Below, piece after piece: positions 4,048 to 28,340 of a stretch of 64,000 bases of DNA; within the stretch, counting starts at the first letter, position 1; the number at the start of each line of letters is the position of its first letter. The stretch comes from Mytilus trossulus (Eukaryota): contig NC_086373.1 in the NCBI RefSeq assembly GCF_036588685.1, positions 25,916,001 through 25,980,000 of the forward strand, read 5' to 3'. The notes below the pieces were generated by a model, which was not told the DNA's origin, made no database searches, and saw only the letters and a list, made by a program, of their open reading frames with translations. Both the position numbers and the translations under genes were made by a program.

Positions 4048-7000
4048 CAAAACAGTGTAATTTTTCATCAACTGTAATTTTACATAATTGACCCGGTCGT
4101 GGAAGGGATTTCTTCTTTCCAGCGGTTTACTTAACTTGTACAAAGGAAAAATCTACAAGAAAATGTTTTTACTGATATAGTTATATGATGTTGTGTGTTT
4201 TTTTATGCACAGTAATGTGACACTCATAATAACTGTGAAGATGTCTTTTCTTTTTAGTTCATTCGTGAAATTTTATTAGTCGTTGCGTTGTATACAATTA
4301 TGTATTTATATATTATATATCGATCGTAGAGGGTCGATTCCGCTTTGATTAAAAGACTTGGGCCATGTCTTCCTCTAACCTAGAACCTATAAATTAACAC
4401 GTTAAGACATGTATCCGTATACCATTCTAGTGCAAATCAGATTAAAATTGCTTATTGCAATATTATATGTACAGCTGGACTACAAAATTACTATTTTAAA
4501 ATGTTATGCTATGTCTAAACTAAATTATGATCGGAAACCGCCATTGCCATTTAATTTACAGTAATAAATTATTATTTAAAACACTAAGGTTTCTCTTTGG
4601 TCAGTCATAAGGTGGACCAACTCAAATATCCCCACGTCCTTTGAACTCTGTTAGATAATTGTCTCATTGAAAGTCAAACCACAACTCCTAATGTTCAAAC
4701 AATTTTTTGTGAAATTTTGGTTTAAAATATTGTTTTACTTCATTCCTGAAATTTTGATTTGAGCGCCACTGGAGAGTCATATATAGGCAAAACACACATC
4801 TGACGTTTTAAGATTATAAGCTTGTCATTTTAATGAGTATTTACAACCACTTGGTCGATGGCACTAACGTCGTCACATATGATAACACCAGCCCAGATAT
4901 TGTGTTGACATGGAATATCTTTGATACTTTGATACGGTCATTGCATATTTATTTACTGTTAATGAACCCCGAAACATCATGCTTCACCCATAAATAGATA
5001 GACGAATGGAGATTTGAGAGGTTTACGGATTTTTCATTCCGTTATTTTATATCTTATAGATAATGCATTCTACGGTTTTAGTTTGTAACACGGATTTGTT
5101 TTCTCCAATTCGATTTATGATTTTTGAATAGCGGTATTCTAATAATGCCTTTATTTCCAGTAAAGTCATACAACTTATTCTTACTTGCGATTTTTCTTTC
5201 GAATTCCTCTTGTGATTCACATATGTTTCCTCTTTTAAAGCAATAACCTTCCCGTTTTGGTTCATGAAAATCACGTCAAACCATAATTTGTAAAACGAAC
5301 ATGTTTGTAGTACGGCAACACAGTTAGAGAAGTTTATACGTAAATAATCTGTATTGACAGTTATATTATTGAAACAGCGACATAAACATCCTGTAGAATA
5401 AAATGAATGAAATTATTCATCACATTAAATCAAATGCAAAATTTCAAAATGAGTTTCATTAATAAAATTTCTCTTTAACTAATGAGACAATATAATACAC
5501 ATATGTAACCAAAAACTTGGAGTGATCTCAAGTGCTCTGGAATGATAAGCTGATCCTACTCAACAAGTAGAACTCGTAAAGCTGATCTTGTTATCACAAA
5601 CCAAGTATTTAGTCAAATTCGGTAGGTCACATTCGAGTATAAACCATCAACATGAAACCAGATCTGAAGTATTTTCAAGCAACAAAAGAGGTATGATAAT
5701 CATAAATGTTGTCTCCTTTTACAATAAAGTTGATTTTTCCTATTATTTTTTTTTTGCATTGGATGGGAAAATCTTGTTGATTTTTTTTTTAACGTTTTGA
5801 AATGTAATTTGATTATCATTTGATATAGCAATATCCGCATTTCTAATAGATATAGGAAGATGTGGTGTGAGTGCCAATGAGACAACTCTCCATCCAAATA
5901 ACAATTTAAAAATTAAACCATTATAGGTTAAAGTACGGCCTTCAACACGGAGCCTTGGCTCACACCGAACAACAAGCTATAAAGGGCCCCAAAATTACTA
6001 GTGTAAAACCATTCAAACGGGAAAACCAACGGTCTAATCTATATAAACAAAACGAGAAACGAGAAACACGTATATATAACATAAACAAACGACAACTACT
6101 GTACATCAGATTCCTGACTTAGGACAGGTGCAAACATTTGCAGCGGGATTAAACGTTTTAATGGGCCCAAACCTTCTCCCTTTTTCTGAAACAATAGCAT
6201 AACATCACAACATATAAAAACATACGATAAAATATCAATTAGCAGACTTAACTCAATCAAAAAACGTATGATTACACAAAGACTAAATAAGTGTCACTGA
6301 CCCCATTAAATTTCCTCGATAACAGTTTTCGATGTTTTCCTTTATATCAAAAAGGCACTATAGAAAAATGGCAAACAGTATAAGGAAAGAAATTAAGAAG
6401 AATAATTTTGCAAATTAGAATTTCTTTACCTTTCAGATTGTATCCTGGTGTTTGACACGTCCTGTTCTCTGGAATGAAACACTGATTTTCGTTATGTCCA
6501 AAGACTAAAAATATAAAATAATGCTTATGAGACATGCATTTTCAACAAAAAAGGGTCTTTTTGTTTAGCTCTTGCTTAGTAAACATTGGGTCTACAATTT
6601 TATACATTATAAATTTTCTTCCAGAAAAAAAGTTGTGTGCTATGAACAATGAAAGCATTCTGATACTTTCAACCTACGATGAACGCTTAACGTAATAGTT
6701 TTTTCACTACAGTAAGTAACTATCTTTGAATAAAAGCTGTTCGGATGTCAGTCGTAGTTTTTTTTCTAAAATAAAGTGCTTTAAAATGAATAGATGAAAG
6801 ATTGTAAACAGCTTCTATAATTATCAAATACAATTTTCTTGGTTGGTAATTAAATATTAAGGAAATACAAACATCTGAATTTGTACATTTCGAATCTTGA
6901 ATATGAAACTAGTGGTTTCTTTAGAGATTGTATTTTGATAAGTTGAATTTGATTTTCCTTGATGTTTCCTATACAACTCATAACTTATCTACGTATTCGA

Positions 7001-7237
7001 ACCTCCCAATGGTTTAAATGTTTGGGTTTGAACGTATCTGGTAAAGGTAAATGATTTTAAATGCAGAAAAAATAGGCTCGGTTGTACAATATTTATGAAG
7101 CGTTGTTTACATTTGTTAAAAGTTTTAACAGTAAAATTATAAACATCTATTTAATTTACTTGTTAGGTTTCATTGCACCCAAAATAACGAAAATTACCTG
7201 ATATAAGAAGGCTAGAAATGATCACAATCCGCAACAT
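4048..7237 (-). CDS. Cys-rich receptor-family paralogue C (signal peptide plus ectodomain; 3' end not found in window)
   Basis: Exons 7237-7198, 6504-6430, 5390-5185, 4152-4048, all GT-AG with phases 1,1,0,0 as in the two paralogues. 142 aa: MLRIVIISSLLISVFG|HNENQCFIPENRTCQTPGYNLKGCLCRCFNN...CVAVLQTCSFYKLWFDV...IFPLYKL...KLQLMKNYTVL. Confidence 0.8.
4755..4970 (+). repeat. Decayed hammerhead-retrozyme-type repeat
   Basis: GAGCGCCACTGGAGAGTCATATATAGGCAAAACACACATCTGACG is a mutated version of the type I HHR core (CTGATGAG..GAAAC..GTC). Related copies at about 17145, 18496, 18561 and 22026. Confidence 0.5.
5845..6285 (+). repeat. Abundant interspersed SINE-like repeat (~430 bp), young copy
   Basis: Near-identical inverted copy at about 47160-47575. 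Older partial copies at about 13070-13200, 14995-15240, 30710-31060 and 48045-48170 share the AAGATGTGGT..GCCAATGAGACAACTCTCCA motif. Confidence 0.75.
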
Positions 7238-7860
7238 GACTTATATCAGAAGACACAAAAATTCTTCATAAAATCTTATTATCCTCAGACACTGAAATGT
7301 CAAATCGTTTTCCTCACATTTTGTGGCTCCATTTGCATCCGCTAAAACAAAATGTGTTCCTTAAAAGTTATAAAAAATCCATTTCAACTCATTATACATA
7401 ATAATTATAGTGCAGTTGTTTACAGAATGAGCCTATGCTAATCCTCGTTGTAGTTTTTTTATTTTTCATTCATCAAAATAAAGCTTGTTTTAAATCTCAA
7501 ACCAAAAATAACAAATGCAGATATTTTATTTAATTACTAATGGTGTGTTTTCAATCTTTCTAAATATCTGCTTCGTTTTATTGTCACAGTTATACAAACT
7601 TTCAACAAAACAATTAAACAGAGCGTTCAAAGTTTCCATTTATGAACAATTTTCTTTTGTTAAGAGACAATCATTTGTTTGTTTTTAAAAGGTGTCAGAT
7701 TATTATTGTTTTTGATTATATTCCCTTTAAACCTTTCCAATTGTGTATATAATGATCATATATTTCTGAATTACAACATTACGTAATAAAAAAGTTAATA
7801 TTATGCTTATATTATGCACTGTTGTGATATTTCTTGATATCTTTTTATTACATATATTGT

Positions 7861-8012
7861 AATATACAAATATTGCCTTTGTATGAGGTCGATTTTAGGA
7901 TATATTGACCTGAAAGAAGTATATTGACTGAGGACAAAGTCCGAGGTCGATATACTTCTTTGGGTCGATGTATCCTGTATTGACCTTATACAGAGGATTT
8001 ATTTGTTATATT
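7861..8012. repeat. Imperfect ~150-bp palindrome (foldback)
   Basis: TGTATGAGGTC / GACCTTATACA, AGGATATATTGACC / GGTCGATGTATCCT and AAAGAAGTATATTGAC / GTCGATATACTTCTTT pair around a GGAC-AAA-GTCC centre. Confidence 0.75.
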
Positions 8013-10990
8013 ATTAATTTCAGACCATTATGCATATTTGAATCAAAATCGTCATTTGATTTTGTTTGAAAGATATCATATTGTCTTCTTGACAATAACA
8101 ACATATTACTTTTTATCTATCTTTTTTTTTTTTTTTTGTAATTGAAGATTATTTTCGTCAAATAATCGATCACAGATATCATTTGTTTCAAAACGTTTAA
8201 CGATATCCTGAAATTCATTACATGACGTCACAAAGTAAATCGGATTTTAAATATTCTAAAAATAACCGTGCAATATGCTCTGTGCAATATGCTTTTTGCT
8301 ATCCGCCGTTTTCTCTCTACCTTCGAAAATGTGGTTTAACATGTGACTATCCCTAAACGAATCAAAGTTGTTAAAATATACGAATTAATCAAATAAACTT
8401 ATATTAACGTATATCTGTCGAAAATACACGATTGGTTTGTATGAGATTTGAAACTACGAAGAAAATCAGGGCTTGTCCGCCTTTTCCTGTTTCTTAGCGA
8501 CTATTTTTTTTATTATATTTGAATATTTGCGACAATTAAATTATATGTTTTCCTTTTTGAAAAGCCATCCATTGCTTTGACTCAAGTGGAGTATTCAAGT
8601 GGAGAATATGACGTAAACAGTAATTTAACTATAAAAGTTCGAACATATCAGAATTAGGATACTAATTGACAATATTTGTGTACTAAACAATTTGTGCTTA
8701 AGTAAATTTGTAAGACCTTTTTTTATATCATAATATGACAAACTCTTACTCTTACAGTAATATTTAATAAATATTATTATGATTGCAGATCTATTACGTC
8801 TGTTCAATTCATTTGAGAAAATAAAACAACGATTGAATAATGGTAGAGATTCTTGACATATCTTAAATAACATTTGGCTTTACTTTAGGTGCTTTTGGTT
8901 TGGATCACGTGTAAACTTTGTATACGGTTTTGGATTTGAACTTTCTATTGTTTTAGCTTATAGCTTCATTTATTTGACTTTGGTTGTCGATTTGCTCATC
9001 TTTTGCAAACAAATAATACTGTTCGTGTATTTACTATCACTTTTTTAAAACATTTTTAAGTGGTAAGTTAGTCCTATAGGGTATAATCAACCCCGGAGAC
9101 AACTTCTGTTATAATTATAGGTTGAAAATACGGGGGTGTCGTGTTTGAATTTGACTGTTTCAAGATTTCGAAATAATTTTTTATTAAGAAATGTATCTTC
9201 TTCATTCATTGTTCTGTTCGTTGTCCGGGTTTAGCTTACTTTCGGTCATTTATGAATTTATCAGTTCTTCAACTTTTTCATTATGTTTAGGTCTTATATA
9301 TTTTGATCTCGAGCATCAATTAACAAAATACTGACGTTATTTATTATATGTATTAAGTGTTACAGTGTTCTTTTTATTTGCCGTTGTATATTTCCATTCT
9401 TTACTATTTAGTCTATCCTTTTGGCGTGGCAAGTAATTTGTACATCCTGCCATTGTGTTATTATGCTATGGTTATTTTTGTATTGTTCTTTTCCATTTTG
9501 ACTATGTGCTTTAAGCGTGTCTGTATGACTTTTTTCTTTGTTGACCGAGTTGTTCGTTTTAATAGTGATTGAGATTGTGATTATTAATATAGCATCGACT
9601 GATGTATCTACATTTTTGACAAAGTTACCTATTATGTCTGTTTGTTTTGCTCACTCATTGTAGTTGATATAATGGAATTCTATGCGACTGTCATAAAATT
9701 TATGTGTTTAGCCAGCTACAACATAAGGTTTAATTAACCGTTTTTCTGCAAAAAGACATGCCTGTGCCAAGTCAAGAATAATGTGTTTGTTTTGGTTGCG
9801 CTTCAGTGATTTTGTTGTTTCGTTGTTTTCCTCTCAGAGTTGATGTGTTTCCCTCGGTTTTAATATGTAATCCGGATTTGTTTTCTCTCAACCGATTTAT
9901 GACTTTAGAACAGCGGTAAACTAATGTGCCTTTATTTAGGCATTTTAATTTGCCTTTTGTTCTCTGTTTGACTTTTTCTTGAAGTTTTTTTTTCTTAAAT
10001 TATTTTACCTGTAATAATTAGATTGGTTTAGAGTTTTGTGTCTTTGAAACATATTCAGTATTTCTATTCTCATAAAGGATTCAAAATATAAAATAACAAA
10101 AATACCGAACCCCGAGGATAATTTAAAACAAAAAGTCTCTAATCAAATAGGAAAATCAAAAGCTGAAACACCTGTATTGATAAATACACATATTCATGGT
10201 ATTATATCCTGTTTTATCTTGCAAAATCACAAACAGTGCATGAAAATCGTCATAAAAGGGCAATAACTCAATAACATAATAATTTTACTTATTTGTAGAT
10301 TTTAATGGTTATTTTTGTTCGAAGCTTCTCTTAAGATATTATGATTTTCAAGATAAAAGATGAAAATAAAAAAAAATCCGATATTTGCGCCATTTAAGTA
10401 AAGGAAGTCATCTGACAGCTTTGATGTCATTAATCATTAGGTACATGTGATCATTTTAAACATTTTCTTTTCGTCAGATTTTTCTATCAAAAGCGGTTTT
10501 TGAGAAAAGAAACGAAAATTGTATTTTAATCCTGAGTACTATTTTTAGTCATGTCGGCCATTTATGAAACAGACGGGGTTATCAGATGCATTTTAAACTG
10601 GATACCCCATAGATTTTGGCCAACTTGGTTAAATTTTGGTTCAATAGTTTGAGAGGTATTGATCTTTGTAAAAATTAAAGGACAATGGAATACTAAAGAT
10701 GATAGACGACGGATCAGAAAATTTAACATTGCCATTCAGCCCTATAATATAAAGCAGGTTGGCATTTTAAAAGAAAACAACTGAAAAGGATTTAATTTGA
10801 AGTCTATTATTTCGCCGTTATAGGCTTCGGGTAGAACACGTATATTACAAAACGAGGCGAAAACAAAACATGAGTAATTTCATGAAAAATAAAGAAAGCA
10901 TGCATGGGTTAATATTTGTTTTATTTTCAACAATTTCTATGATCAGCTGTTTTACAATTTTTGTATGGATACATTTTTGAATATTTGACT

Positions 10991-13900
10991 TTAGTTTCTA
11001 GAATTTACTATATGAACTTGTTGTAAGGCACTCGAATATTCTATGTTATTATCGAGTAACTGACGTGCAGACCGTCGCCATTTACAGACAATAATAAACG
11101 CATTAACAGCCATCACGAACACAGCAAGAATACCCAGTATAATCGGAACAATCGGCAAGTTTTCTGGTCCATTTCGTTTTGCATTGATAGGACTTGTGCT
11201 GGTCTCCACTGGTATTTCTAAAAGCAATAACATGAAACTAAATCATATCAAAACATATTCACATCTTGACTTGAACATTGGCTTAACAAAAAATATATAT
11301 GCAATTCTCAATAAAGAACCTTTAGCTATCTTATGATATCTCACGCCACCAATGTGAAGGTGGAAAACCTTTTGATGGCCTGATAGCTTAGGTTTTGTTT
11401 CGGTTTAATTCAAGAAAGGTTTAAATTCGGTTTCGTTTTTCTGCAGTCATATTGTGCTAAAAAATCCTTTATCGACATTGACTTACCCTAGTGACTTAAA
11501 AATCTTGAACATTTTCTGCTCAAACAGTCTATTTATTTTCGGTAACTTTGGTCTTATCTCGTATGTAGTGACATCCATTTCAATATGGATATGTAATATC
11601 TAGCGCCTTAAATTCGATTTCTTTTAAAATTCTAGTCTTTTTTTCAAAGCTATGACCTTCACCTTTTAGGAATATGTTTATATATCACTTCACACACATA
11701 GACATCAAAATCAATTGAGATCTTGCTTTCGTATCCCAATGTTAACGTTTGTTTAGTATTTGATATAAAGTATTGTTCTTACCTATAAGACCTATAGATG
11801 CACAATTGTCGTCACAAATAGTGCAACCTGGCTGAATCTAAAACGATAATGTAATGTTCAAGGTATGTATCTCTATATCCCTATATAATCAGTTAATCTA
11901 TTGTTTTTTTATTTGGTCGGGATGTTGTCTCTTTGATACATTCCCCATTTCCATTCTCAATTTTAGCTCTTATATTGGGAAGATTTGACTAACAACTATT
12001 AGATATTTATATCTTAATGCTGATTTTTGCACTTTGTCGGTTAAGTAGGATATTCTTAACTTCGGATCAAGCAATACTTTGTGCTGAAAATTAAATAGAC
12101 AATTTGTTGTGTTGTACAACTTTGTGTTGCGTGTGCGCTTATTAGAACGAATCCGACACAATTTTCTCGTTTATTTGATATTTTGGATGTATAGGTTCTG
12201 GCCATAACTGTACAAGGCTCGTCTAGAAAACAAACATTTGTTTAACAAGTAGTTTACTACAAAAGAATACATGTTTTGTCCGATAGATTTATTCAAAAGA
12301 AGCAAACTATTGTGTTTTAATGCTTGTATAAATTGATTGGATATAAGGTTTATGTTTTTCTTATATCATTTTCACTTAAAAAGTAAAATTACAAAAATAC
12401 TGAACTCCGAGGGAAATTCAAAAATGAAAGTCCCTTATCAAATGGTAAAATCAAAAGCTCAAACACATGAAACTAATGGATAACAACGGTCAAATTTTCT
12501 GATTTGGTACAGTCATTTTCTAATGGAAAAGGGATGGATTAAATCTGGTTTCAAAGCTAACTAAACCTCTCACTTGTATAACAGTCGCATAAAATAATAC
12601 CAATGTCTCTTTATATTTGTTGTATTGAATTAATCCCTGAAACCATTGTAATCTTTATCATTATGTTATTGCCTTAATTTAAAATATTTTATTGTAAACG
12701 TATCCTTACTAAGACTGAATACGGTCTGTCTAGCTTCAGTTTACTATCCAGTGATCTTTTTAATCCATTTAAAAGCAATATCTGCAACAACAAAATGAAA
12801 GGTTATCGCTACCAAGAACACATTTTATTCAAGAACGGATAACATATGTTGACAAAGTAAATAGCTCTCATAATTTTTTTTTATTAATGCAATAGTAATG
12901 CGAAAATGCAATAAACATTATAAATTCATCATAAAACTTGAAAAAAAACTATGCTTACTATTTTTGGAGTGTGCAAAATTCTTTGCCTGTTTAAGATAAA
13001 TAACGTGCCTTTGGTTATCTTTTTAAATCGGATAACTGTTTGACTGTTCAACTGTTTGATTGGTTTTAAAACTTACTATGCGGTGTTGGTTTTAGCTCAT
13101 TTTTGAAGGCCGTACGATTACCTATATATGTTTGACTTCTACGCCATTCGGTCTTAAGTGGAGAGTTGTCTCATTGGCAATCATACCACTAGTTCTTATT
13201 TTAATTTTGATAATTTCACCTTACAACCTTGCCCACTGCTAACAAACATTAAAAACTGCGAAAAATAAAATCACCTTCGACCCGTTATCGGTTCTGTAGT
13301 TTGACATTATTGTCGTTTTATTGACAATATTTCCATTCTCGTCATGTATCTCTAACTCAAACCAAAATTTGTAGATATCACATTGTTCTAGAAGCTCCAT
13401 GCATGGAAAATATGATATTGTCAAGTCTATTCTGTTTATCGTAACATTCAAGCATTCACAAAAACAAACTGAAATAAATAAAAATTAATAACTAAACTGT
13501 AATAGCTTTACTTTTATTGGGATACAAGTTTTCTTTCATATATGCCCTTATAAACTAATAAGTTAAGATGTGTAAGTGATGAATACCATAATAAACAGAA
13601 ATATTTTGGAGTATTGAGCTACTCAGTAATAACTGCGTTAATTATAAATTCGATAGTTCACAAATCAAGGCGACTGCTTAAAACACATTTAGTTAACCAA
13701 CCTATACTGTCTACATCTGGTGGCATACAGGAAACGTTTCTTGTCAACGTACATGAATGCACTCCTGCGGCTAAAATATCAACAAAACAGGAGTTTTATA
13801 CCATGTAGTAATACGTTCAAAAAACGGAGTTGAATGTAAATCATCACGAAAGAATTACTAATAATAATTATGATGCAACCTTTGAATGTCTGTTCATAAG

Positions 13901-15655
13901 ACGGTCCGTTGCGTAGTTTGTAATTGGAAATCCTTAATGCACGGCTGGTAATCTACACATGCAGAACATTTGGTTCTGCAATGAAAACCGTGAGAGGATC
14001 TTCCGGTTGTGCTTGAGTAGAGTAATTATCACCGCTTCAAAAGGTATGTACATTTCTAAATCGTAATTTTCTTATTCAACTGATCGAAATATTGAAAATC
14101 GGGAATGCTATGCTGTGGTGAATACCACTTTAACAAAGAGATGCATGTACCATTTACTGTTGTACGTGTAGTTGAACTCCTACAAAATTAGTTGCCACAC
14201 GAGAAATTGCATAAAAAAGTTTTTTTTACGGTCAATTGATATGAATGTCGTTTTTGGTGGCGTGTACGCTGTCCAGTGTTGTTAGACATCTTTATAAATC
14301 TAAAAACTACATTTTTTCATTATTTTATGCGTGAGGGGATCGGTTCTGATTGAGGACATCGTGAATGCGTGAGCGGACGTGAAATCATATCTTAAGGTCT
14401 CTTAATATAATTATTTCAAAATTTAAATGTGACTTTTTTATGCAATTTCTCGTGGAGCAACTAGTTTTGTAGGAGTTCAACTCCACGTACAACAATAAAT
14501 AATACATTATCGCTTGGTTAAAGTATTCACCACAGCTTAGCATTCTTCGATTTTCAATATTTTGATCAACTGAATAAGAAAATTACGATTTAGAAATGTA
14601 CATACCTTTTGAAGCGGTGATAATTACTCTACTCAAGCACAACCGGAAGATCCTCTCACGGTTTTCATTGTAGAACCAAATGTTCTGCGTGTGTAGATTA
14701 CCAGCCGTGTAATGGTCGCAACGGTAGAACATAGTTTACAATACTTAATTGGAAAATCTCATTTTAACCACATTTGAAATCATTGTGAAATTGAAACCAA
14801 ACTAAAAATGTATGATAATTGGATAGAATCCTTTCATTTATTTATATCCGATAGTGTCTCTTTTTATTTTTAAAAATGGAAACGTAACTAAGAATATATC
14901 GGTTTATTCATAAATGAATTATTGCACAAAAAAAACAATTGACAAGTGATATTTAGTTGAGTCCTCATTTGACAAAATTTCACTTTTCTTTTTAGGTCGT
15001 TTGTTTATGTGTTACATATTTATTTTTCGTTCATTTTTTTTTATATAAATAAGGCCGTTAGTTTTCTCGTTTGACTTGTTTTACATTGTCATATCGGGGC
15101 CTTTTATAGCTGACTATGCGGTATGAGCTTTGCTCATTGTTGAAGACCGTATGGTGACCAATAGTTGTTAATGTCTGTGTCATTTTTGGTCTCTTGTAGA
15201 CAGTTGTCTCATTGGCAATCATACTACATCTTCTTTTTTATATTTACCTTGATCCATTGTAAATTTTGATTTTGAAAAATGTCTTTCCGACAACAGTTTT
15301 CTTCAGTAGCTCAATAGTATATATTGAAAGTTTTGAAACTCATAGGTTACATTAATTGATATATCTATACTGTTTTATGTTGTGTTGTTTGCCTGTTTGA
15401 CTTTTTTTGTTTCATTTTCAACCATGGCGTTGTAAATTTAATTTCGACTCATATGTTTTTTGCGCCTCTCTTTTTATATCTATTATATGCATTATCGAAA
15501 ATATCCTTTCTTCGAACAAATTAGACTAGTATCTGGTGTTTTTTTTTAATTTAAAAGTTATAAGGTTATACCATTATATATAATATATACATACATACAA
15601 TGCTGGCAATAGCAGCTATACTACTCAGAACCATAGTAATTATATGTGTGTTCAT
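10991..15655 (-). CDS. Cys-rich single-pass receptor paralogue B, short cytoplasmic tail (225 aa; putative IL-17R-like decoy or co-receptor)
   Basis: Exons 15655-15595, 13770-13702, 13468-13275, 12781-12710, 11837-11783, 11217-10991 give 678 nt in frame. Signal MNTHIITMVLSSIAAIASIVSA; ectodomain ends IQPGCTICDDNC; TM IVPIILGILAVFVMAVNAFIIVC; tail KWRR..NNIEYSSALQQVHIVNSRN*. Internal exon lengths 69/194/72/55 nt are identical to paralogue A. Confidence 0.85.
12378..12595 (+). repeat. Interspersed repeat family (AAAATACTGAACTCCGAGG..AAAATCAAAAGCTC)
   Basis: Related copies at about 10085-10170, 21265-21435 (inverted) and 54800-54930 (inverted). Confidence 0.6.
13940..14709. mobile_element. Foldback MITE with CAC..GTG termini and 5-bp TSD (Transib/RAG-like-type signature)
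   Basis: About 280-bp inverted arms (13940-14220 and 14432-14709), termini CACGGCTGGTAATCTACAC / GTGTAGATTACCAGCCGTG, TAATG duplicated at 13935-13939 and 14710-14714. Lies in intron 1 of paralogue B. Confidence 0.8.
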
Positions 15656-17887: not shown

Positions 17888-18274
17888 AATAGACAACTTT
17901 CGAGTTCGATGCATTTCCGTCAAAAACTCTGGTTTTAGTGAACGCCATTTGTGCGTTTAGGGGTGTCGTCACTTCCATTCCAATGTTGAGCAAGTTGTTG
18001 GAAAACTATAATTCTATATTGTACGAATTATTCTGCTAATTGAGTTCTCAAAATTGACAATCAGCATTGCTGTCATTAGGGAATTGTCTTTAAGTACCTA
18101 CAGAACAACCATTATTTCTAGTTTATCCTGCACAATGACGATCACTATGACGCTTGATGAACGTAAATAGTGCAGGGATACAGGCGACCCCCTCTATCTG
18201 GTAAATGACGTCATAAAGGCGCGTATAATTGACGAGTTTTTTCCGGTGATGGATGAACTCGAAAGTGGACTATT
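17888..18274. mobile_element. MITE family with AATAGAC..TTCGAGTTC TIRs, copy 1
   Basis: AATAGACAACTTTCGAGTTC / GAACTCGAAAGTGGACTATT; homologous to 41076-41461 and 42238-42552 in the opposite orientation. Confidence 0.8.
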
Positions 18275-18464
18275 TATATGAGCTACAACTTGAGTATATA
18301 AAAAAACAGGAAATGCAAATAAACACCTGTGTTAAATTTTGCATTAAAACAAACGAAAGACTCGACAACGTGCAGTAAATAACCGACGAAAAGTATACTG
18401 CTCTGTGCTAAAGATCTATAATTAAGTTTTTCTTAGGTATCATATCTCAATTCATACTCACGAA

Positions 18465-18800
18465 ATAAAAGATACCAGAACTATAATTTTGCAATCCAGA
18501 CATGCGTTTCGTCTACCAAATTAACTCATCATATATACCAGGATTGAAATTTTGTATTTACGCCAGATGAGCGTTTGGTCAGTAAAAGACTCATTAGTTA
18601 CAAAGACCGTCTTCTACCAAGAGGCTTATTAGTAAATCAAACAAGATAATAAGGGTAAATGAAGTAAGAAGTTGACGAGCATTGTAGACAAAAAATTCGG
18701 CAACATTTTGCCAATACAGTTAAAGTATATATTCGAGGGGAAAGAAATCATCGTTAATCTTTTAAACAATTCAAAGTTTTGGTAAACAATTTATAATTAT
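18465..18800 (-). repeat. Degenerate tandem hammerhead-ribozyme retrozyme remnant
   Basis: Minus strand 18531-18496 = TGATGAGTTAATTTGGTAGACGAAACGCATGTCTGG (HHR core lacking C3 and stem I); second copy 18598-18561 = CTAATGAGTCTTTTACTGACCAAACGCTCATCTGGCG. Confidence 0.6.
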
Positions 18801-19624
18801 GACGATGATAATTGATAGGATATTAAGCTTTGTCACATACAATGAGATACAAAGTGTACATTGAAGGATAAATAACTTCTAGACACTATTGTAATATCAG
18901 AAATATTAGAAACAGAAAGAAAACAAATGAGCTTTGAATACAACAACACAAACTGCTGCTTTCAATAATTTATTATTTATTCTTAATGTATTTAATGGCA
19001 TTTAAACAAATAACAACAGAAACTAATAACTTTTAATGATTAATCGGGAGTGTTTATTTGTATTGGTGTATATGATTGTCGCCACAATTTGAAATTATTA
19101 TTGGATGCAAGTACAGTTTGTTAGCGACGAAGAGTAAACATTTATTACAAAATAACTATATAAATTTTCACACTCAGTTTCCTCGTTCCATACACTTGTA
19201 TCTGAACGATATTCCATTTTCATGGTTTGTTTAATTTTGGTAAGTTTCATTTTGGGTTCAAAGTACAGACGATGGGACTTTAATGTGGCATATCACTCAA
19301 GTGAAACTCTAAATTAATGACGTATCAAATGTGAATCTGACGACATAAATTAGCCGTTGAAAAACGGATTTAAAAAAATGCAAAGTAGTCTTTTATCTAT
19401 TTAATGTTTTAGATGTCAGTCTGATTATAGCATTACACATTAATGAAAGAAGGCATTAGAGCATATTTTTTGTTTTTATTGGTTACAATGATAATACAGT
19501 AAGATAAAATAATAAACTGAGCATAAAGGGTTGACTTTAAGATAAATTAGATTTAAGAAAGATCTTAAATGCTGATATTAAAATTCATAAAATGCCATTG
19601 TATCTGCTGTCTTTAACAATTCTG

Positions 19625-22600
19625 TTAAATGCCGACTAATTCATTGCTTTCTATTCGATTTAAAAAATTATTAAATTTATTAACCCTTTCTTTGCATGTA
19701 CCAGAAAGATCATCAAATTTCTGTAAAATGCTCTTGAAAACATTAAAAGTGTCAAAATTAAGAATTAGTAGTTCTAAATCCGGTTCAAACGACATAAAAT
19801 ATGTAGAAGGATAAAGATCTTCATCTGTCATTACCTTCTTTATTAAGATTAAACATTTAGATATAGGTCCATTATTATTGCAACTCCAAAACATATCTTT
19901 TACTACAATGTTATTAAGAATGACTATGTTTGTTCTATTTTCCAAAATTTTGTCGTGAAATGAGTATCCGGTTTGATTTTCAACGACAAAGGCTGCAGGA
20001 TCTAATACTTCAATCTTGAAAACAGTGGTGGGTATGAATGATAGTAACTCGTGAATTAATATCTTGTCAGAATTCAATGATATAATATTTATGGTCTTTT
20101 TAGATTTGTTTAGTTTGGTTTCTTGTTCTCCTTGCCCTGATATTATCTGAATTTGCCTTGAAAATGGAATATCGATGCGGTCCATTGAGTGCATTGTTGG
20201 TTTATTTTCGACGTCTTTTCCCACACTTGAATATTGTGTGTGTATGTTGTTCAGTGGTGAATCTTGATCAGTCTTCTTGTATCTACAGACCAAAATCAAA
20301 GTAACAACTGCGGCCATTATTGCAACAAAAACGCTCATAACAACTGCCAGATACAACCATTTTCTTGAATCCTCATGTTCGATACTGGCAGGACTTGTTA
20401 CCACAGCCGGTGGTATTTCTAAAAATTAAAACAAATTAATATTTTCCTTTGCTTTCATATAACTTAGGGAATGTACTACTATTTCATTGTAAAATGTTGA
20501 ACAATGCATATCAATTTTACACTGAGTACGATAGATTTGTACAATCCATCATCAGTGCACCTTTAGAATTAAGGACTCCCCACTTCAATTTTTTTTTACT
20601 ACTTGCTCTAGTTGGGAGGGCATTATTTTTATTCCCAAGTCACGTTTGTGGTAAAGGATGGCTTCTTAGTTTATGGTGGGGAATGCATAACAACAAGAGA
20701 CGATATTCTTGTCGACGAATCCGTCCATGTTGTCAAAACATTTAGAGTATAACTATATTAATCAGACTCAAAATTCTATAAACTGAATATTACTGCATTT
20801 GATATTTCGAGCACAGATTGTATACCCCTGAAACTGCGTATAGTTTTATGACCAAAGTCCCCGGGTTTTTTTTTAATCAGTACTTGGGTTACAAAATTTG
20901 TGTTCAAGACAACAATATCTGTATTTTTGTTTGATGATTTTTTATTCTGCTTAAGAAAAATTTATAACTGCAAGGCCTGGTCTCGAACCTTCTCCAATTC
21001 CATCGGTCGTTGTTTGTTACCAAAATTAGTTTCTTCTTCATTGAGGTGTGATATTTGAACATCGTTAAATTATTGTTGCCTTAATTTAATGTCTAAACAG
21101 CTTGAGAAACATCTTACCCATATCCGGCATGAATTCACAAAAATCATCACAACTGGTACATCTTGGTTGAATCTAAAGAGGGGAAAACATTAATTGATAA
21201 GACCTAAGTTTATCTTATCCTATAGTTAGTAATTGTCATTAATTTTATATTATAATCTATTGTACGTTTAATCCACCATTTTCTATATTTGAAAATGCCT
21301 GTACCAAGTCAGGAATATGACAGTTCTTGTCCATTCGTTTTTGTTACGTTTTGTTGTTTGATTTTGCCATGTGATTTTGGACTTTCCGATTTGATTTTCC
21401 TCTAAGTTCAGTATTTTTGTTATTTTACTTTTTGTATTGATTTTGTGATTAATTGTTTAAACAAAAACAGTATATTTATTACCCAATTGGCTAATACGAT
21501 AAATGTCATGGAAAGTTAACATCACTACTCAAAGATAGCAGCATTTCAATGAAAATATAACGATTCAAAACAGTAATAACCATTGATAACAAATACAGAA
21601 TATCATACTATGATAACTGAATCATGAGGGTAGTTATTTGCGTCACATACATATAGTTTCCGAAAAAAATATGTTGACAATTAAGAAATTTTGTATAAAT
21701 CTTACCGATACTGTGTACCGTTTGTTCAATTTCAATTTTTGATGAAGCGAATCTGTTAACTCGTACAAAGGAAATATCTGAAATGGAGGGGAAATATTGT
21801 TGTTAAACAAATCAAGTAATAGCCTAATATTACCAGACCAATAAAAAGCACTTCTGAGTTGACATGTTTATCATTGAAATTGTCAACGTTTGCAAAACTT
21901 TGAATTGTTCGAAATTGTAAAGGATTATCTACCCTAGAAAAAGATTATCGTAGCTGTGGTCTTTTAAACTTTAAGTTTTCGGCATTTTAAGTCTTCAATG
22001 CTCACTAATTCGTACTTTTTTATTCCAGCGTCACTTATGGGTCTGTTGTTATTGAAATGTGCGTCTGGCGTATAAAAGTTTTGTTTATTGGAAAAGTAAG
22101 TGATCAGATTCAACATGCAAGAGAACGTATATAGCAATTTTACCTGACCATATCGGAAAATAGGTATTTAGTCGGATCGTAACACGTATTTGAGATTTGT
22201 TTAAACCGGTTTTCGATAAAAAAAAAAATATATACGAAGAAATGTCAAAATGTTTAGGACTTAATTAAATCCGTATTTCGGTAATATTGTGCAAGCATAC
22301 GATTTTTATTGCGTCTTTCACTTTGAGAAGCGAATAATCTGTAACTACTTTATTCAAATATTCTGTAAAAACGTTAATTTTGAGCTATGAAAGTCAAGTG
22401 GCTCGAGAATTTTTCTGAGGAAATTTTAAAAAAGTGCAAAAAAATATTTTTACAGTGGGTTAGCTTTCATTAGTCTTCACTATCAGAATCATCATTGAAG
22501 GTGGAGCACGATTGCGCAGTTATTTAATTATATGGATGTGCCATTTGTATGATGAGTGACATTCCGTGGTATTATGTGCCAATTCGAAAAAGTTATCCGA

Positions 22601-25350
22601 GAATTGTCTCCCCTTAACAGGTTTATTTTTTTTATAATTATGTTTAGGTTTCTGATATAATTTTGAATAATTACAAAATGAATCAATGTAATATATTTCA
22701 GTTTTTGTTATTGATGTATCAAAACAATTGATGTACGAATATAATTTCATAAATTTGAAACGTTAAAAATTTTTACATACCAATATAAAGAACTTTTTAT
22801 CATTTTTGAAATAGACTATGAATGAAAATTGCATGAAATTGCTTCCCTTCATGATAGATTGATAGGGAAATGAGTATAATGACAAAAAAAAAGATAGGGA
22901 AATGAGCCAGAGTTATCTATTAGTGATGACAGAGAGGGACTAGCAAGCAAATTTTAATTGTAGCTAGTTCATTGTTAAAACAATGTTCCAATATAAACGA
23001 ATGTTATTTTATACAAATATAAGGACTTAGTTAGCTAAATCTACAAATTTTATTTGAAAATATGAATTTTTATTGCAATAGATTAATATGCTATATAATA
23101 ATACTGTACATCACATATATACTTCAACATTGTCATAACGCGGAAGGTATGTCACGCATTTAAACCAGGTTCAACCCAGCATATTATAAAATGTTCTGTA
23201 CCAAGTCAAGAATATGGCAGTTGTTATCAAATAGTTCGTCACTATGTTTGTTAGCGTTTGTGTTTGGTGTACTTTGGTGTTCCTGTTTCTCTCGGTTTTT
23301 GGTTAGTAACCCGGATTTATTTTCTTTCGTCGATTTGTGAATTCTAAATACCGATATACAACTGTTGCATTTATTTAACTTTGCACAGTTACTTTTGGGA
23401 AAGAGAATCAAGAGTTTTGATCACTCAATGCTATCCTTCAGTTACATTTTTCTTTTATTTAGATTTTCCCGGTTGGCAATCTGAGTCATGAAAATTACCT
23501 CCGATTTATTTTCACTTTTATGATTAATGTAGACCTCTGTAGTGCCGACGATTTGTTCCTCTTCATCTTGAAACCAAACCTCCAACCATAATTTATAGAA
23601 ATTGCATTTTTGCAAAAGTTTTTCACAAGGTGAGAATATAACTTCCAAATATTCTCTGTTGATTTTAGCATCCAAACATCTGCAGAAACACACTACAATA
23701 AAAGTATAAATCAATAGAGATAAAAAGTAAATCAACAAAAATATATAGCTACAAAGAAGATTCTAAACAGAAAATCCAATAACAAATGGCAAAATCTAAA
23801 TCTCAAAAACATCAAATAAATGAAAAGCAACTGTCATATCTTAATATGCTGTAATACAGCAGCTGTATCGAGTTATATTCGATTTATTTGAATATTTTAG
23901 TTTTTTGCATCGTAAACATACCTCTTGCATTTAAGCTGGGATGCGTACAGTCAATTTTGGTTATTGCAGAACATAAGTGAGCTCCGACAGCTGAAAACAG
24001 ATGAAATCAGTGGAAGTGGAATAAAATTCATTTGAAAAGTAAGGTCCCATTAAATCATTTTTTTTTTTAAATTTGGATGAATATTGATATGCATATGTCA
24101 TACAAATAAAAAAAGCTTTACCAGTATATGTACAAGAATTGAAAAATAATAATGATGTTTGCCCGTTGCTTTAATAAATCACTTGTGTTTCTATTATGAT
24201 GATAACCCCAAATCAGGCATAGAATGATAGGGCTTAAAAAAAAAACCCGCAAGCACCTTTTTGAATTACATGGTTTTTAAGAACGTATAGTTAGTTTGCT
24301 CTGTTACCAGTCAGTAGTCCTGTCTTTAATTAACCAGAATTTTTTTTTCAAACGTCTTTATCATATTTAAGATTTAAGAAGTGAAGACACGTTTATCCAC
24401 CATACAGGCATGTTGTTTCTCATTGGGCATATGAACAATATGCTATAAAGACTATTTATTATAAATTTGATCGATCAGTCAAATCAGTGAATATGACAAT
24501 TCTGGTGATTCATGTTTCTTTATTTCTTTCTGTTATATCTCATTTCTTTATAATAAGTAATAATTCTTATATGATTTGCATATTAGGGAATACGTTGATA
24601 TGATTGGTTATGAAAACTTCCTGTAGCTGATCTTGAAGTTGGTTATGTGGGAGTGTGGAAAAATAGATTCCCTTTCTCCAATTTTAAAGAATTATAAAGA
24701 TCAAACGTCTTTTCAAAGGAATTTATTGGTGTTTAAAAGAGGAACGAAAGATACCAGAGGGACAGTCAAACACATATATCGAAAATAAACTGACAACGCC
24801 ATGGCTAAAAATGAAAAAAACAAACAGACAAACAATAGTACACATGACACAACATAGAAAACTGAAAATAAGCAACACGAACCCCACAAAACAACTAGGG
24901 GTGCTCTCAGGTGCCTCGGAAGGGTAAAAAATCCGGCTCCACATGTGGTACCCGTCGTGTTGCTTATGTGATAACAAATTCAGTAGATAGTCTATAAATT
25001 CGGTACGTAACATTCATGAAAGGGAAGGTAAACTGAACCAAGTCGCTCACAAACATATCATAAAAGTCCTTTAGACTTTTAATTGTTTGTGAGTGAATTG
25101 GTCGAGTTTATACACCAATAAATTCCAAAAGGCGATTAATCCTATGCTAAATTTATTTCAGCTTGCCACTTATGTGCATGCCAGTTGTTACACTATAATA
25201 TGAAACATAAAGGATATATACATTTACTTTATTAACAAAATTTCTGTTTCAATTTCCACAAATATCTATCTTTGACTTACCTCCAGAATAAGCAATTATG
25301 AATACAGCAACAACAAAATACATGTTGATTTTGCCTTCCATCTGTGTCAT
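19625..25350 (-). CDS. Cys-rich single-pass receptor paralogue A with long cytoplasmic domain (417 aa; putative divergent IL-17-receptor-like / SEFIR-like)
   Basis: Exons 25350-25281, 23990-23922, 23692-23499, 21777-21706, 21172-21118, 20418-19625 give 1254 nt in frame. Signal ..MYFVVAVFIIAYSGAVG; ectodomain ends IQPRCTSCDDFC; TM WLYLAVVMSVFVAIMAAVVTLILVC; about 220-aa cytoplasmic region. Gene structure is high confidence; family assignment is tentative. Confidence 0.85.
24735..25030 (+). repeat. Interspersed repeat (GATACCAGAGGGACAGTCAAA..AACGCCATGGCTAAAA family)
   Basis: Second copy at about 28805-29005 adjoins a Penelope RT fragment, suggesting a retroelement-end origin. Confidence 0.65.
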
Positions 25351-25987
25351 TCATCTGCATTGAACCAAGCTAACAATAATTTGTAAGAACTTTTAATCAT
25401 GTATAATTAGACCTGGGACCAATAGATAATGCATTAATCCCGGATTAGACATTTATCAAATAGGGGTATTCTTTTCGCATTGATTAAATATAAATGGAAA
25501 ATAGAAATTTTTAATAATATTTCCGCAATGTCACTGTTTCCACGCGGAAAGAGGTCGGCTTTTAATCACAGTTAATAAGAATTAACAAAGAAGATTTTTT
25601 TTATGATCATTGAAATTAAACATTTGTTAGAGTTACACACATGACATACACGACAACTTTCAGAATTAAAATGATGTTGTTCATTAACAAAATATATAAT
25701 TCTTATCGGTTTTTATAAGATCTGTTCACGAAGATTAATTATCTACAAATTAGACAAGAAATAAATATGTTTTAGGGGGTTCAAACATTTTTTAGGCTGG
25801 TTAATATTTCGCTTTAGGCAGTGAGTTAAATTCAATTTTGTCAAAATAGGGTTACAAACAACGCAAATGTATTATTAGCTTACAAGTCAATAATTAAACC
25901 ACGTCTGCATCCATGCAAAATTTAATTCGAAATTTAGTGGAGAAGGGTTGCGCATAAGATCAGTGTGTGGTCAGCATGTTATATTAT

Positions 25988-27376: not shown

Positions 27377-27487
27377 GTAACGTCACAGGAGCGCTCTCAA
27401 AAGGCTTTTTTCATAGTAACGTCACAGGAGCGCTCTCAAAAGGCTTTTTTCATAGTAACGTCACAGGAGCGCTCTCAAAAGGCTTTT
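27377..27487 (+). repeat. 39-bp tandem repeat x3 at the LTR/gag deletion junction
   Basis: GTAACGTCACAGGAGCGCTCTCAAAAGGCTTTT(TTCATA) three times. Confidence 0.85.
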
Positions 27488-28340
27488 GCGGAGATTTGAC
27501 GATGTGAAATCTAACGAAGAATTTGACAGAGATGAACTTTCAACCATTTTGGATTTGATCATTGATAAGCAAAGATTTTTGTCAGACTTAAACAATCAAA
27601 TTATTAGTGGACTATCGGAAGAGGAACTCGAAGCGGAAATTTCTGATTCAGATGAGTATTCTATAACTTTAGAGACAAAAATACGCAAAATGCGTAAATT
27701 CCTAGAACCAACCGCCCGTACATATTCACTCCCAGTAACAGATAGTTCACTTAACCCCTTAGCTCAGAGTTTTGATGTCAATGGACACCAAACAGCATCG
27801 TTTAATTCGCAACTCATGTATGCTCATCATATGTCAAACACCAACAACCAATTTCACAAATTACCAAAGTTAGAACTTTCTAAATTCGACGGCAACATTC
27901 TTAATTGGCAAGCATTCTGGGAATCTTACGACACAGCAATTTATAGTAATCCCTCATTAACAGACGCCCAGAAATTCAACTATTTGAAAACGCTACTTCA
28001 AAACGAAGCTTTGACTACAGTTTCGGGTTTTACGCTTACAAATTTAAACTACAGTAAAGCAATAGATTTATTACACCAGCGATTTGGACAGACTAAAAAA
28101 AAACCGCACACGTACATGCAGACTTTGTGACTCTATCCGCACTCGATAGTACAGTACAATCATGCCGCAGATTTTATGACAAATCAGAAACGCTCATAAG
28201 AGGACTAGAATCACTAGGTCAAAGTCAGGAATCATATGGTGCATTACTTATACCTATTATGCTCAACAAATTACCAAGTAGAATTAAGGAAAATATTACC
28301 CGTGAACATGGTTTAAAGCAGTGGTCGCTTAATGAACTCA
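27486..28340 (+). pseudogene. BEL/Pao gag (DUF1759-type), frameshifted
   Basis: KLPKLELSKFDGNILNWQAFWESYDTAIYSNPSLTDAQKFNYLKTLL..NYSKAIDLLHQRFG, a frameshift near the A-run at about 28100, then IRGLESLG..YGALLIPIMLNKLP. Confidence 0.85.

What the first reader, a model, noticed from the sequence alone, without database searches (positions are those of the whole stretch)
4048..25350. Tandem array of three divergent Cys-rich receptor paralogues invisible to the ORF track: candidate unrecognised immune receptor family
Seen: three head-to-tail minus-strand genes share exon phases (1,1,0,0, then 1 in A and B). A and B share exact internal exon lengths (69/194/72/55 nt). All three keep C-x7-C-x9-CxCxC-x16/17-C-x6-C and YK(L/F)W; A and B add IQP-x-C-x2-C-x3-C. 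Residues between the cysteines diverge strongly and the signal exons are unrelated, yet all frames remain open. Known: vertebrate IL-17RA has a membrane-proximal IQP..C...C motif at the end of its FnIII-like ectodomain, and bivalves have expanded IL-17 ligands and immune receptor arrays. Inference: a rapidly diversifying, one-domain IL-17R-like or novel receptor family.
Basis: partly seen in the sequence, partly recalled or inferred. Interest (0 to 1): 0.85.

Follow-up and report, generated by a model that had tools for sequence, protein, structure and literature searches.

The report
Mussel-only mini IL-17-receptor-like gene cluster
A cluster of four small receptor genes found only in Mytilus mussels pairs a cysteine-rich fibronectin-like outer domain with a very divergent TIR/SEFIR-like signalling domain, alternating with tail-less copies; it looks like a stripped-down relative of interleukin-17 receptors, but its function is untested.

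Summary
Genes A, B and C on the minus strand of this Mytilus trossulus window have the stated exons, phases and cysteine motif. A and B match RefSeq proteins exon for exon, and spliced contigs from four runs confirm three junctions of A.

Corrections:
- The array has four genes. A short-tail gene D lies 8-13 kb beyond the window start.
- Gene C continues outside the window, also carries the IxP-C-x2-C-x3-C exon, and has a long tail.
- The genes are annotated, as "uncharacterized".

Layout: long (A), short (B), long (C), short (D).

No Pfam family, PDB sequence or profile comparison recognises any domain. Only Mytilus proteins match among 1.8 billion representatives.

Predicted structures show one FnIII-like ectodomain. 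The cytoplasmic domain is flavodoxin-like. Its best fold matches are TIR domains (Z 10.6) and a chain of the IL-17RA/RB/ACT1 complex (Z 9.5), barely above CheY receivers.

Language-model neighbours are all SEFIR/IL-17R clusters (0.93). UniRef names the M. coruscus C orthologue "SEFIR domain-containing".

Best reading (about 0.6): a Mytilus-restricted, degenerate, single-FN3 IL-17R-like family with tail-less decoys or co-receptors. Membership is not proven: the double FN3 is absent and no SEFIR model matches. An immune role and the rate of evolution remain untested.

The parts
25281..25350 (-). Gene A (LOC134707261) exon 1: start codon and signal peptide, ends in phase 1
   Evidence: Translation is an exact substring of RefSeq P0001 and the donor is GT. 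The sequence was read.
23922..23990 (-). Gene A exon 2, 69 nt, phase 1 to 1, with the first two conserved cysteines (C-x7-C). It is a cassette exon, skipped in RefSeq isoform X2.
   Evidence: AG/GT boundaries and an open frame. It is present in the orthologues P0002-P0004 and P0029. No contig from four runs covers it.
23499..23692 (-). Gene A exon 3, 194 nt: CxCxC, C-x6-C and YKLW; the core of the FnIII-like ectodomain
   Evidence: The junction 21777|23499 is seen in spliced contigs of 4 runs.
21706..21777 (-). Gene A exon 4, 72 nt, phase 0 to 0
   Evidence: The junctions 21172|21706 and 21777|23499 are confirmed.
21118..21172 (-). Gene A exon 5, 55 nt: membrane-proximal IQP-x-C-x2-C-x3-C
   Evidence: The junctions 20418|21118 and 21172|21706 are confirmed.
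19625..20418 (-). Gene A exon 6: stalk, transmembrane helix, about 55-residue disordered linker and about 160-residue STIR-like (TIR/SEFIR-like) alpha/beta domain, then the stop codon
   Evidence: Exact match to P0001. AF2 models were made. Fold matches are TIR at Z 10.6 and the IL-17RA/RB/ACT1 chain at Z 9.5.
15595..15655 (-). Gene B (LOC134707256) exon 1: start codon and signal peptide
   Evidence: Exact match to RefSeq P0007.
13702..13770 (-). Gene B exon 2, 69 nt
13275..13468 (-). Gene B exon 3, 194 nt (CxCxC ... YKFW)
12710..12781 (-). Gene B exon 4, 72 nt
11783..11837 (-). Gene B exon 5, 55 nt (IQPGCTICDDNC)
10991..11217 (-). Gene B exon 6: stalk, transmembrane helix and a tail of only about 30 residues, then the stop codon. 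There is no signalling domain.
   Evidence: Exact match to P0007. The same stop occurs in the related P0010. The juxtamembrane part aligns with A.
7198..7237 (-). Gene C exon 1: start codon and signal peptide
   Evidence: The orthologues P0015 and P0038 start the same way.
6430..6504 (-). Gene C exon 2, 75 nt (C-x7-C)
5185..5390 (-). Gene C exon 3, 206 nt (CLCRC ... YKLW)
4048..4152 (-). Gene C exon 4, 105 nt. The gene continues beyond the window start. Exon 5 (IKPHCTACDNSC) begins at G000:C1:25915847. Exon 6 (TM plus STIR-like domain) lies at about 25913857-25914563.

Best explanation
The window holds three genes of a four-gene, head-to-tail cluster on Mytilus trossulus chromosome contig C1. 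The order is A long, B short, C long, D short, and D and the 3' end of C lie just outside the window.

The cluster encodes a Mytilus-restricted family of small type I membrane receptors. Each protein has a signal peptide, one cysteine-rich FnIII-like beta-sandwich ectodomain of about 125 residues (10 invariant Cys), a short Cys-containing stalk and one transmembrane helix. These parts are shown by sequence and predicted structure.

The long forms A and C add a disordered linker and a cytoplasmic domain of about 160 residues. That domain has a flavodoxin-like fold that most resembles STIR (TIR/SEFIR) domains. The fold is shown; homology is inferred.

I infer three things:
- The long forms are highly degenerate, single-FN3 descendants of IL-17-receptor-type receptors.
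- They signal by homotypic STIR contacts with an adaptor such as the mussel CIKS/Act1 homologue or a TIR adaptor.
- The conserved tail-less forms B and D act as membrane decoys or ligand-binding co-receptors for their long neighbours.

The ligand is unknown. The expanded mussel IL-17 family is one candidate.
For: Gene models:
- Exon boundaries, phases and exact matches to RefSeq proteins were checked.
- Spliced contigs from 4 runs confirm three junctions of A.

Family size and range:
- A profile search of the whole genome finds only the exons of A, B, C and D.
- Only 10 hits appear among 1.84 billion representatives, and every hit that carries a source name is from Mytilus.

Ectodomain:
- The AF2 model has pLDDT 70-85 in the domain.
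- Foldseek matches FnIII domains of cytokine receptors and fibronectin at E 5e-5 to 6e-4.
- VIA matches reach Z 7-8.4, including IL-17RB D2 at Z 7.2.

Cytoplasmic domain:
- Two independent models give TIR domains first: Z 10.6 (138 aligned), 10.3 and 10.0.
- The IL-17RA/RB/ACT1 chain 9ot1_E gives Z 9.5 (139 aligned).
- By my count, 11 of the top 20 are TIR or SEFIR.

Other support:
- ESM Atlas: the ten best clusters are all SEFIR/IL-17R, score 0.93, 203 of 256 features shared. The cytoplasmic part alone gives SEFIR 0.78, TIR 0.76 and CIKS-like 0.75.
- UniRef names the M. coruscus C orthologue (P0009) 'SEFIR domain-containing protein'.
- The literature reports that about half of invertebrate IL-17Rs have FN3 domains too degenerate for domain models, and often SEFIR domains too (PMC11087794).
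- Short forms keep their stop and structure across species: B in P0010, D in M. galloprovincialis P0014.
Against: No sequence model supports it:
- Pfam SEFIR, TIR and IL17R_fnIII give no hit even at E 10.
- A six-frame PF08357 scan of the genome finds about 10 canonical SEFIR loci but not these genes.
- hhalign against seven mussel SEFIR domains gives E 0.47-0.71, although the weak alignment is in structural register.
- Profile searches of PDB sequences give only transmembrane hits.

The structural evidence is limited:
- Fold Z scores for TIR/SEFIR (8-10.6) are only about 1 above CheY receivers and GTPases (8-9.8).
- The models rest on shallow alignments (10-14 sequences; mean pLDDT 64-69).
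- The model shows a beta hairpin where SEFIR has helix alphaB. It shows no long CC' insertion, which is SEFIR-specific according to PMC4014126.

The ectodomain is one FN3-like domain, not the defining pair.

No expression, ligand or signalling data bear on an immune role.
Confidence: 0.6

Rival explanations
1. This is a new FnIII-ectodomain receptor class whose cytoplasmic domain descends from TIR, not SEFIR. On that view it is a TLR/IL-1R-pathway-type receptor, or an equidistant new STIR branch, and not an IL-17R derivative.
For: TIR domains outrank the SEFIR chain in every fold search: Z 10.6, 10.3 and 10.0 against 9.5, and 10.3 and 10.1 against 8.4. SEFIR-specific elements (helix alphaB', long CC' insertion; PMC4014126) are not evident in the model. 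The cytoplasmic part alone scores almost the same for SEFIR (0.78) and TIR (0.76) in the Atlas.
Against: Pfam TIR models do not hit either. The full-length Atlas neighbours are all SEFIR/IL-17R, none TLR or IL-1R. UniRef's automatic name for the C orthologue is SEFIR. An FnIII-type ectodomain goes with IL-17R, not with TIR receptors, which use LRR or Ig (PMC11087794).
Confidence: 0.2
2. This is a lineage-specific orphan membrane protein family, for example for adhesion or chaperoning. Its cytoplasmic domain would be a generic flavodoxin-like fold unrelated to STIR, and the receptor resemblance would be only architectural.
For: There is no significant sequence similarity to any known domain. 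CheY-like receivers and GTPases score within 1 Z unit of TIR/SEFIR. The tool notes say a best Z of 7-8 is common for unmatched models. Atlas hits of 0.9 or more arise for 4-10% of shuffled proteins.
Against: TIR/SEFIR matches align more residues (132-140) than receivers (113-127) and dominate the top ranks, although by my reading of the lists receivers outnumber them further down. 203 of 256 shared features is typical of same-family hits. The UniRef name is independent of these analyses. A flavodoxin-like domain directly behind the membrane of a type I receptor is, to my knowledge, otherwise STIR.
Confidence: 0.15
3. The copies are decaying duplicates or annotation artefacts without function.
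For: Identity to the nearest proteins of sibling species is low, at 65-89%. Of the 10 differences in exon 6 of A listed, 7 are nonsynonymous and 3 synonymous. B and D lack the tail.
Against: All frames are open with canonical splice sites. A is spliced and present in RNA-like contigs of four runs. Ten cysteines and other residues are invariant across paralogues and species. Both short forms keep the same architecture in other species.
Confidence: 0.03

Closest known systems
IL-17 receptor family (IL-17RA-E; invertebrate 'degenerated' IL-17Rs; mussel IL17R-A to -F of Saco et al. 2021, PMC8353272)
   Same: Both are type I topology with an FnIII-type ectodomain, a single TM helix and a cytoplasmic alpha/beta domain of the STIR fold. 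The nearest language-model clusters are all SEFIR/IL-17R. One orthologue is auto-named SEFIR domain-containing. Degenerate FN3 and SEFIR domains are known to be common in invertebrate IL-17Rs.
   Different: This family has one FN3-like domain, not two, and is only 210-420 aa long against 566-874 aa for the six described mussel IL-17Rs, all of which have HMMER-detectable SEFIR. No Pfam SEFIR or IL17R_fnIII match was found. The SEFIR-specific CC' insertion and alphaB' helix are not seen in the model. The 10-Cys signature is its own. Tail-less paralogues are interleaved with the long forms.
TIR-domain receptors (IL-1R/SIGIRR, TLR) and plant/bacterial TIR domains
   Same: These give the best structural matches for the cytoplasmic domain: RPS4 TIR Z 10.6, SIGIRR TIR 8.8, IL-18Rbeta TIR 8.3. 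SIGIRR is likewise a single-ectodomain receptor.
   Different: There is no TIR sequence signature. The ectodomain is FnIII-like with its own cysteine pattern, not LRR or I-set Ig.
Class I/II cytokine receptors (IL-7Ralpha, common gamma chain, EpoR, gp130/OSMR FnIII domains)
   Same: These give the best Foldseek and VIA matches for the ectodomain: E 5e-5, and Z 8.4 for an OSMR FnIII domain.
   Different: Only one domain is present, not the two-domain cytokine-binding module. No WSxWS motif occurs in any family member. The cytoplasmic part is a folded STIR-like domain, not what class I/II cytokine receptors carry (by my own knowledge they use Box1/Box2 JAK-docking motifs; not checked here).
Decoy or tail-less receptor paralogues (e.g. 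IL-1R2, soluble or truncated IL-17R isoforms)
   Same: B and D keep the ectodomain, stalk and TM helix but end 20-30 residues after the membrane. Each sits next to a long form.
   Different: They are encoded by separate, conserved genes and do not arise by splicing. Decoy activity is inferred only.

Membership tests
IL-17 receptor family | Type I membrane protein: signal peptide, extracellular N-terminus, single TM helix | tested here: met
   There is a hydrophobic N-terminal exon. A predicted helix spans residues 163-194 of P0003, between the ectodomain and the cytoplasmic domain.
IL-17 receptor family | Ectodomain made of a pair of FN3 domains (double-FN3), as defined in PMC11087794 | tested here: not met
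   The ectodomain is about 125 residues and forms one beta sandwich. One FnIII-sized match is found per hit. There is no room for a second domain.
IL-17 receptor family | FnIII-like fold of the ligand-binding domain | tested here: met
   Foldseek gives E 5e-5 to 6e-4 to FnIII domains. VIA gives Z up to 8.4, and IL-17RB D2 gives Z 7.2, no better than other FnIII domains.
IL-17 receptor family | Sequence match to IL-17R ectodomain models (Pfam IL17R_fnIII_D1/D2, IL17R_D_N, Ig_ILCR1) | tested here: not met
   hmmscan of 10 family proteins at E up to 10 gives no such family.
IL-17 receptor family | Cytoplasmic SEFIR domain recognisable by sequence | tested here: inconclusive
   Pfam PF08357 gives no hit. 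hhalign against 7 mussel SEFIRs gives E 0.47-0.71. Against that, UniRef names P0009 'SEFIR domain-containing protein', and the Atlas neighbours are SEFIR clusters at 0.93.
IL-17 receptor family | SEFIR-type structure: five-stranded parallel sheet with helices alphaA, alphaB', alphaB, alphaC, alphaE and a long CC' insertion (PMC4014126) | tested here: inconclusive
   A parallel alpha/beta core is present and aligns to 9ot1_E at Z 9.5 over 139 residues. However, the model has a hairpin in place of alphaB and no long CC' insertion. Model confidence is moderate.
IL-17 receptor family | Binds IL-17-type cystine-knot ligands and recruits CIKS/Act1 | not testable with these tools
   This needs binding and signalling assays.
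TIR-domain receptors (TLR/IL-1R) | TIR domain recognisable by sequence (Pfam TIR, TIR_2) | tested here: not met
   No hit at E up to 10.
TIR-domain receptors (TLR/IL-1R) | TIR fold | tested here: met
   TIR domains give the top matches at Z 10.6, 10.3 and 10.0, though only about 1 Z above CheY receivers.
Class I cytokine receptors | Two-domain cytokine-binding module with a WSxWS motif | tested here: not met

The most novel reading that the evidence does not exclude
This is a previously undescribed, genus-restricted class of STIR receptors. It has one cysteine-rich FN3-like domain and a STIR branch that neither TIR nor SEFIR sequence models recognise. The genes are organised as alternating signalling and tail-less pairs. 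They diverge unusually fast between sibling Mytilus species, or are kept as deep allelic or presence-absence lineages. That pattern would suit co-evolution with the expanded mussel IL-17 ligands or with pathogens.
Probability: 0.3. Interest if true: 0.65.

Novelty: new variant of a known kind. Interest (0 to 1): 0.5.

Why it matters
Mussels have one of the largest IL-17 ligand repertoires known (23 isoforms), but only six recognised receptor types, all found through their SEFIR signature (PMC8353272). A family that escapes every domain model yet has receptor architecture and a STIR-like fold would add candidate receptors and decoys to that system. It would also illustrate how far IL-17R-type receptors can be reduced, to a single FN3. 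The four genes are small, clustered and easy to express, so they are a tractable test of signalling/decoy pairing in an invertebrate. If the low between-species identity reflects selection, the locus is also a candidate for host-pathogen or ligand-receptor co-evolution in a genus known for gene presence/absence variation.

Tried and rejected
- **Pfam.** Scans of single exons and of ten full-length family proteins gave only transmembrane or chance hits.
- **PDB sequences.** Profile searches gave only TM segments.
- **Profile-profile comparison.** hhalign of the cytoplasmic alignment against seven canonical mussel SEFIR domains cut from the same genome was not significant.
- **Pfam SEFIR over the whole genome in six frames.** It finds the canonical loci but not this cluster.
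- **TNFR-like reading.** Rejected, because only the TM helix matched.
- **Class I cytokine receptor.** Rejected: one domain and no WSxWS.
- **Large expanded family.** Rejected: protein and profile searches of the genome find four genes only.
- **dN/dS on orthologue DNA.** The paralogues are too diverged (30-45% identity) for a meaningful estimate.
Not tested, since no tool gave me that sequence and I did not type it from memory.
- **Joined spliced model.** The window's exons were not assembled into a joined model or searched that way. Exons were used by reference, and full-length work used database proteins (P0001, P0003, P0007, P0015 and others).
- **Transcript evidence for B, C and D.** Not obtained.

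Full report
**Origin and anatomy**

The window is G000:C1:25916001-25980000 of Mytilus trossulus. It is AT-rich eukaryotic DNA without N.

On the minus strand, three paralogous six-exon genes lie head to tail. Every coding-exon boundary I placed has AG/GT splice sites, and the phases are 1,1,0,0,1.

- **Gene A (LOC134707261).** Exons are 25350-25281, 23990-23922, 23692-23499, 21777-21706, 21172-21118 and 20418-19625.
- **Gene B (LOC134707256).** Exons are 15655-15595, 13770-13702, 13468-13275, 12781-12710, 11837-11783 and 11217-10991. The internal exon lengths 69/194/72/55 nt are identical in A and B.
- **Gene C.** Exons are 7237-7198, 6504-6430 (75 nt), 5390-5185 (206 nt) and 4152-4048 (105 nt). 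The gene then leaves the window.

The translation of each exon of B is an exact substring of RefSeq XP_063422939 (P0007). The same holds for A against P0001, except for exon 2, which RefSeq isoform X2 skips.

Exons were used by reference, and full-length analyses used proteins returned by the databases.

**Transcription**

Contigs from four public runs (three studies; recorded as probable RNA) were laid on 19600-25400. They skip exactly 20418|21118, 21172|21706 and 21777|23499, each with GT..AG on the minus strand. A 1428-nt contig spans exon 3 through exon 6.

No contig covered exon 2 in any run. This agrees with the exon-2-less isoform X2. Exon 2 is in phase (1 to 1) and carries the first two conserved cysteines, so it behaves as a cassette exon. 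It is present in the orthologous proteins P0002-P0004 and P0029.

Contigs cannot give expression levels or tissues. I had no second read-laying run for B, C or D.

**Corrections to the observation**

- **Gene C is complete but runs off the window.** Its exon 5 (IKPHCTACDNSC, so the IxP-x-C-x2-C-x3-C motif is present in C too) starts at genome 25915847, which is 153 nt before window base 1. Its last exon, a 243-codon open frame, lies at about 25913857-25914563.
- **There is a fourth paralogue, D.** It has the same six-exon layout at G000:C1:25902582-25908102 (window -13418 to -7898). It is closest to M. galloprovincialis LOC143079332 (P0014, 210 aa).
- **The family is small.** Searches of the whole 1.3-Gb genome with proteins and with a family profile return only the exons of A-D.

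The order along the minus strand is A (long tail, about 408 aa with exon 2), B (225 aa, tail of about 30 residues), C (about 392 aa by its M. edulis orthologue P0038) and D (short). An earlier first-stage note on the A/B stretch (s1-823733) proposed the long-tail/short-tail pairing, and I confirm that anatomy.

**Range**

A profile of the family scored against 1.84 billion representative proteins found 10 proteins. A word-indexed search of 5.8 billion proteins found 9.

All hits that carry a name are from M. trossulus, edulis, galloprovincialis, coruscus or californianus, and are called 'uncharacterized' or 'unnamed'. The one exception is the M. coruscus C orthologue P0009, which UniRef calls 'SEFIR domain-containing protein'.

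One further long-tail relative (P0021, 393 aa) comes from unnamed assemblies. It is only 29-45% identical to any M. trossulus copy and 32% identical to the M. edulis C orthologue P0038. It is a fifth lineage, or comes from another mytilid.

**What the domains are**

Sequence methods recognise nothing:
- Pfam gives no hit at E up to 10 on exons and on ten full-length proteins.
- PDB sequence profiles give only TM hits.
- Pfam SEFIR scanned over the genome finds about ten canonical loci but none here.
- hhalign against seven of those mussel SEFIR domains gives E 0.47-0.71. The weak alignment does pair the first strand, first helix, second strand and third strand in register.

Structure prediction is more informative:
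- The full-length M. californianus A orthologue (14-row alignment, mean pLDDT 64, domains 70-85) gives one beta sandwich, a TM helix, a disordered linker of about 55 residues and an alpha/beta domain.
- The sandwich matches FnIII domains of cytokine receptors and fibronectin (Foldseek E 5e-5 to 6e-4). VIA Z reaches 8.4, and IL-17RB domain 2 scores Z 7.2, not better than other FnIII domains.
- The cytoplasmic domain was modelled twice. It matches TIR domains best: RPS4 TIR Z 10.6 over 138 residues, Cat1 TIR 10.3, AtTIR 10.0.
- Chain 9ot1_E of the IL-17RA/RB/ACT1 helical assembly scores Z 9.5 over 139 residues. SIGIRR, TIRAP, MyD88 and IL-18Rbeta TIR score 8.3-8.8, and a prokaryotic SEFIR scores 8.1.
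- CheY-like receivers and small GTPases follow within one Z unit and align fewer residues (113-127).

The fold is therefore flavodoxin-like with a STIR preference, not a decisive STIR hit. The model lacks the long CC' insertion and has a hairpin where SEFIR has helix alphaB. PMC4014126 describes these elements as typical of SEFIR.

The ESM Atlas feature search places the full-length protein among SEFIR/IL-17R clusters only: the ten best all fall there, at score 0.93 with 203 of 256 features shared. The cytoplasmic part alone gives weak SEFIR, TIR and CIKS-like neighbours at 0.75-0.78.

**Interpretation**

The anatomy is that of a type I receptor with an FnIII-type ligand-binding domain and a STIR-type signalling domain. 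This is the IL-17R plan (double FN3 plus SEFIR; PMC11087794) reduced to a single FN3-like domain.

That paper also reports that about half of invertebrate IL-17Rs have FN3 domains too degenerate for domain models, and that SEFIR degeneration is frequent. A family missed by HMMs is therefore plausible.

Saco et al. 2021 (PMC8353272) catalogued six mussel IL-17R isoforms of 566-874 aa. All have HMMER-detectable SEFIR, and this family is not among them.

I therefore read A and C as degenerate, single-FN3, IL-17R-like STIR receptors, and B and D as tail-less decoys or co-receptors. My confidence is about 0.6 for the STIR/IL-17R-like part and above 0.9 for the gene models.

Formal membership in the IL-17R family is not shown. 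The double-FN3 criterion is not met, sequence recognition of SEFIR is inconclusive, and ligand and adaptor binding cannot be tested here.

The rival readings are a TIR-derived or equidistant STIR branch (0.2), a generic flavodoxin-like orphan (0.15), and decaying copies (0.03).

**Evolution**

Ten ectodomain cysteines, and P, R, L, Y and S positions, are invariant across A-D and the fifth lineage.

An ectodomain tree groups B with A (support 84/91). It groups D only weakly with C (54/39). The branches of the two short forms are very long, 1.8 and 2.5 changes per site. This fits each short form arising beside a long one and then evolving faster, but the order of events is unresolved.

The nearest named proteins in sibling species are unexpectedly distant:
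- A is 65-74% identical to M. edulis and M. galloprovincialis proteins.
- C is 71-83% identical to M. edulis.
- D is 65-89% identical to M. galloprovincialis.

Yet contigs in the laid runs match A at about 98-99%. Of the ten differences listed in exon 6 of A, seven are nonsynonymous.

This could mean fast evolution, deep haplotypes or presence/absence variation (known in Mytilus: PMC7653742 title and abstract), or non-orthology.

**Verdict**

This is a real, expressed, Mytilus-restricted four-gene receptor cluster. It is best described as a new, minimal variant of the IL-17R/STIR receptor kind. Its immune role and ligand are untested.

Noticed in passing
G000:C1:25902582-25908102 (window -13418 to -7898), minus strand: This is a fourth family member, D. 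It is short-tailed, has the same six exons, and is 65-89% identical per exon to M. galloprovincialis LOC143079332. It completes an alternating long/short/long/short array.
   Followed up: partly
window 23922-23990: Exon 2 of gene A is absent from all contigs of four runs and from RefSeq isoform X2, yet orthologous proteins of other species include it. Skipping it removes the first two of the ten conserved cysteines.
   Followed up: partly
window 13940-14710: An inverted repeat of about 770 bp sits in intron 1 of gene B. Its arms, about 13941-14063 and 14586-14708, are about 95% alike in translation. It looks like a foldback or MITE-type element.
   Followed up: no
window 21152-21539 and 24644-25031: These intronic stretches of gene A have depths in the thousands to tens of thousands in contigs of all four runs. 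Many loose ends and odd joints are seen there. They are highly repeated elements, probably transcribed.
   Followed up: no
window 5845-6263 and 47159-47577: A repeat in intron 2 of gene C recurs on the opposite strand about 41 kb away, with 65-100% identity in translation; a weaker copy lies near 30784-30974.
   Followed up: no
window 60880-63986, minus strand: Three long open frames of 402, 425 and 173 aa lie here. By eye they have reverse-transcriptase-like and endonuclease-like sequence, which suggests a LINE-type retrotransposon. This was not checked with any tool.
   Followed up: no
window 27486-28130 (+) and 57819-58931 (+): The first is a 214-aa open frame that looks gag-like by eye. 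The second is a 370-aa Ser/Thr/Asp-rich open frame of unknown nature.
   Followed up: no
genes A, C, D versus proteins of sibling Mytilus species: Identity to the nearest M. edulis or M. galloprovincialis proteins is only 65-89%. That is much lower than I would expect for orthologues within the M. edulis complex. The cause is unexplained.
   Followed up: partly
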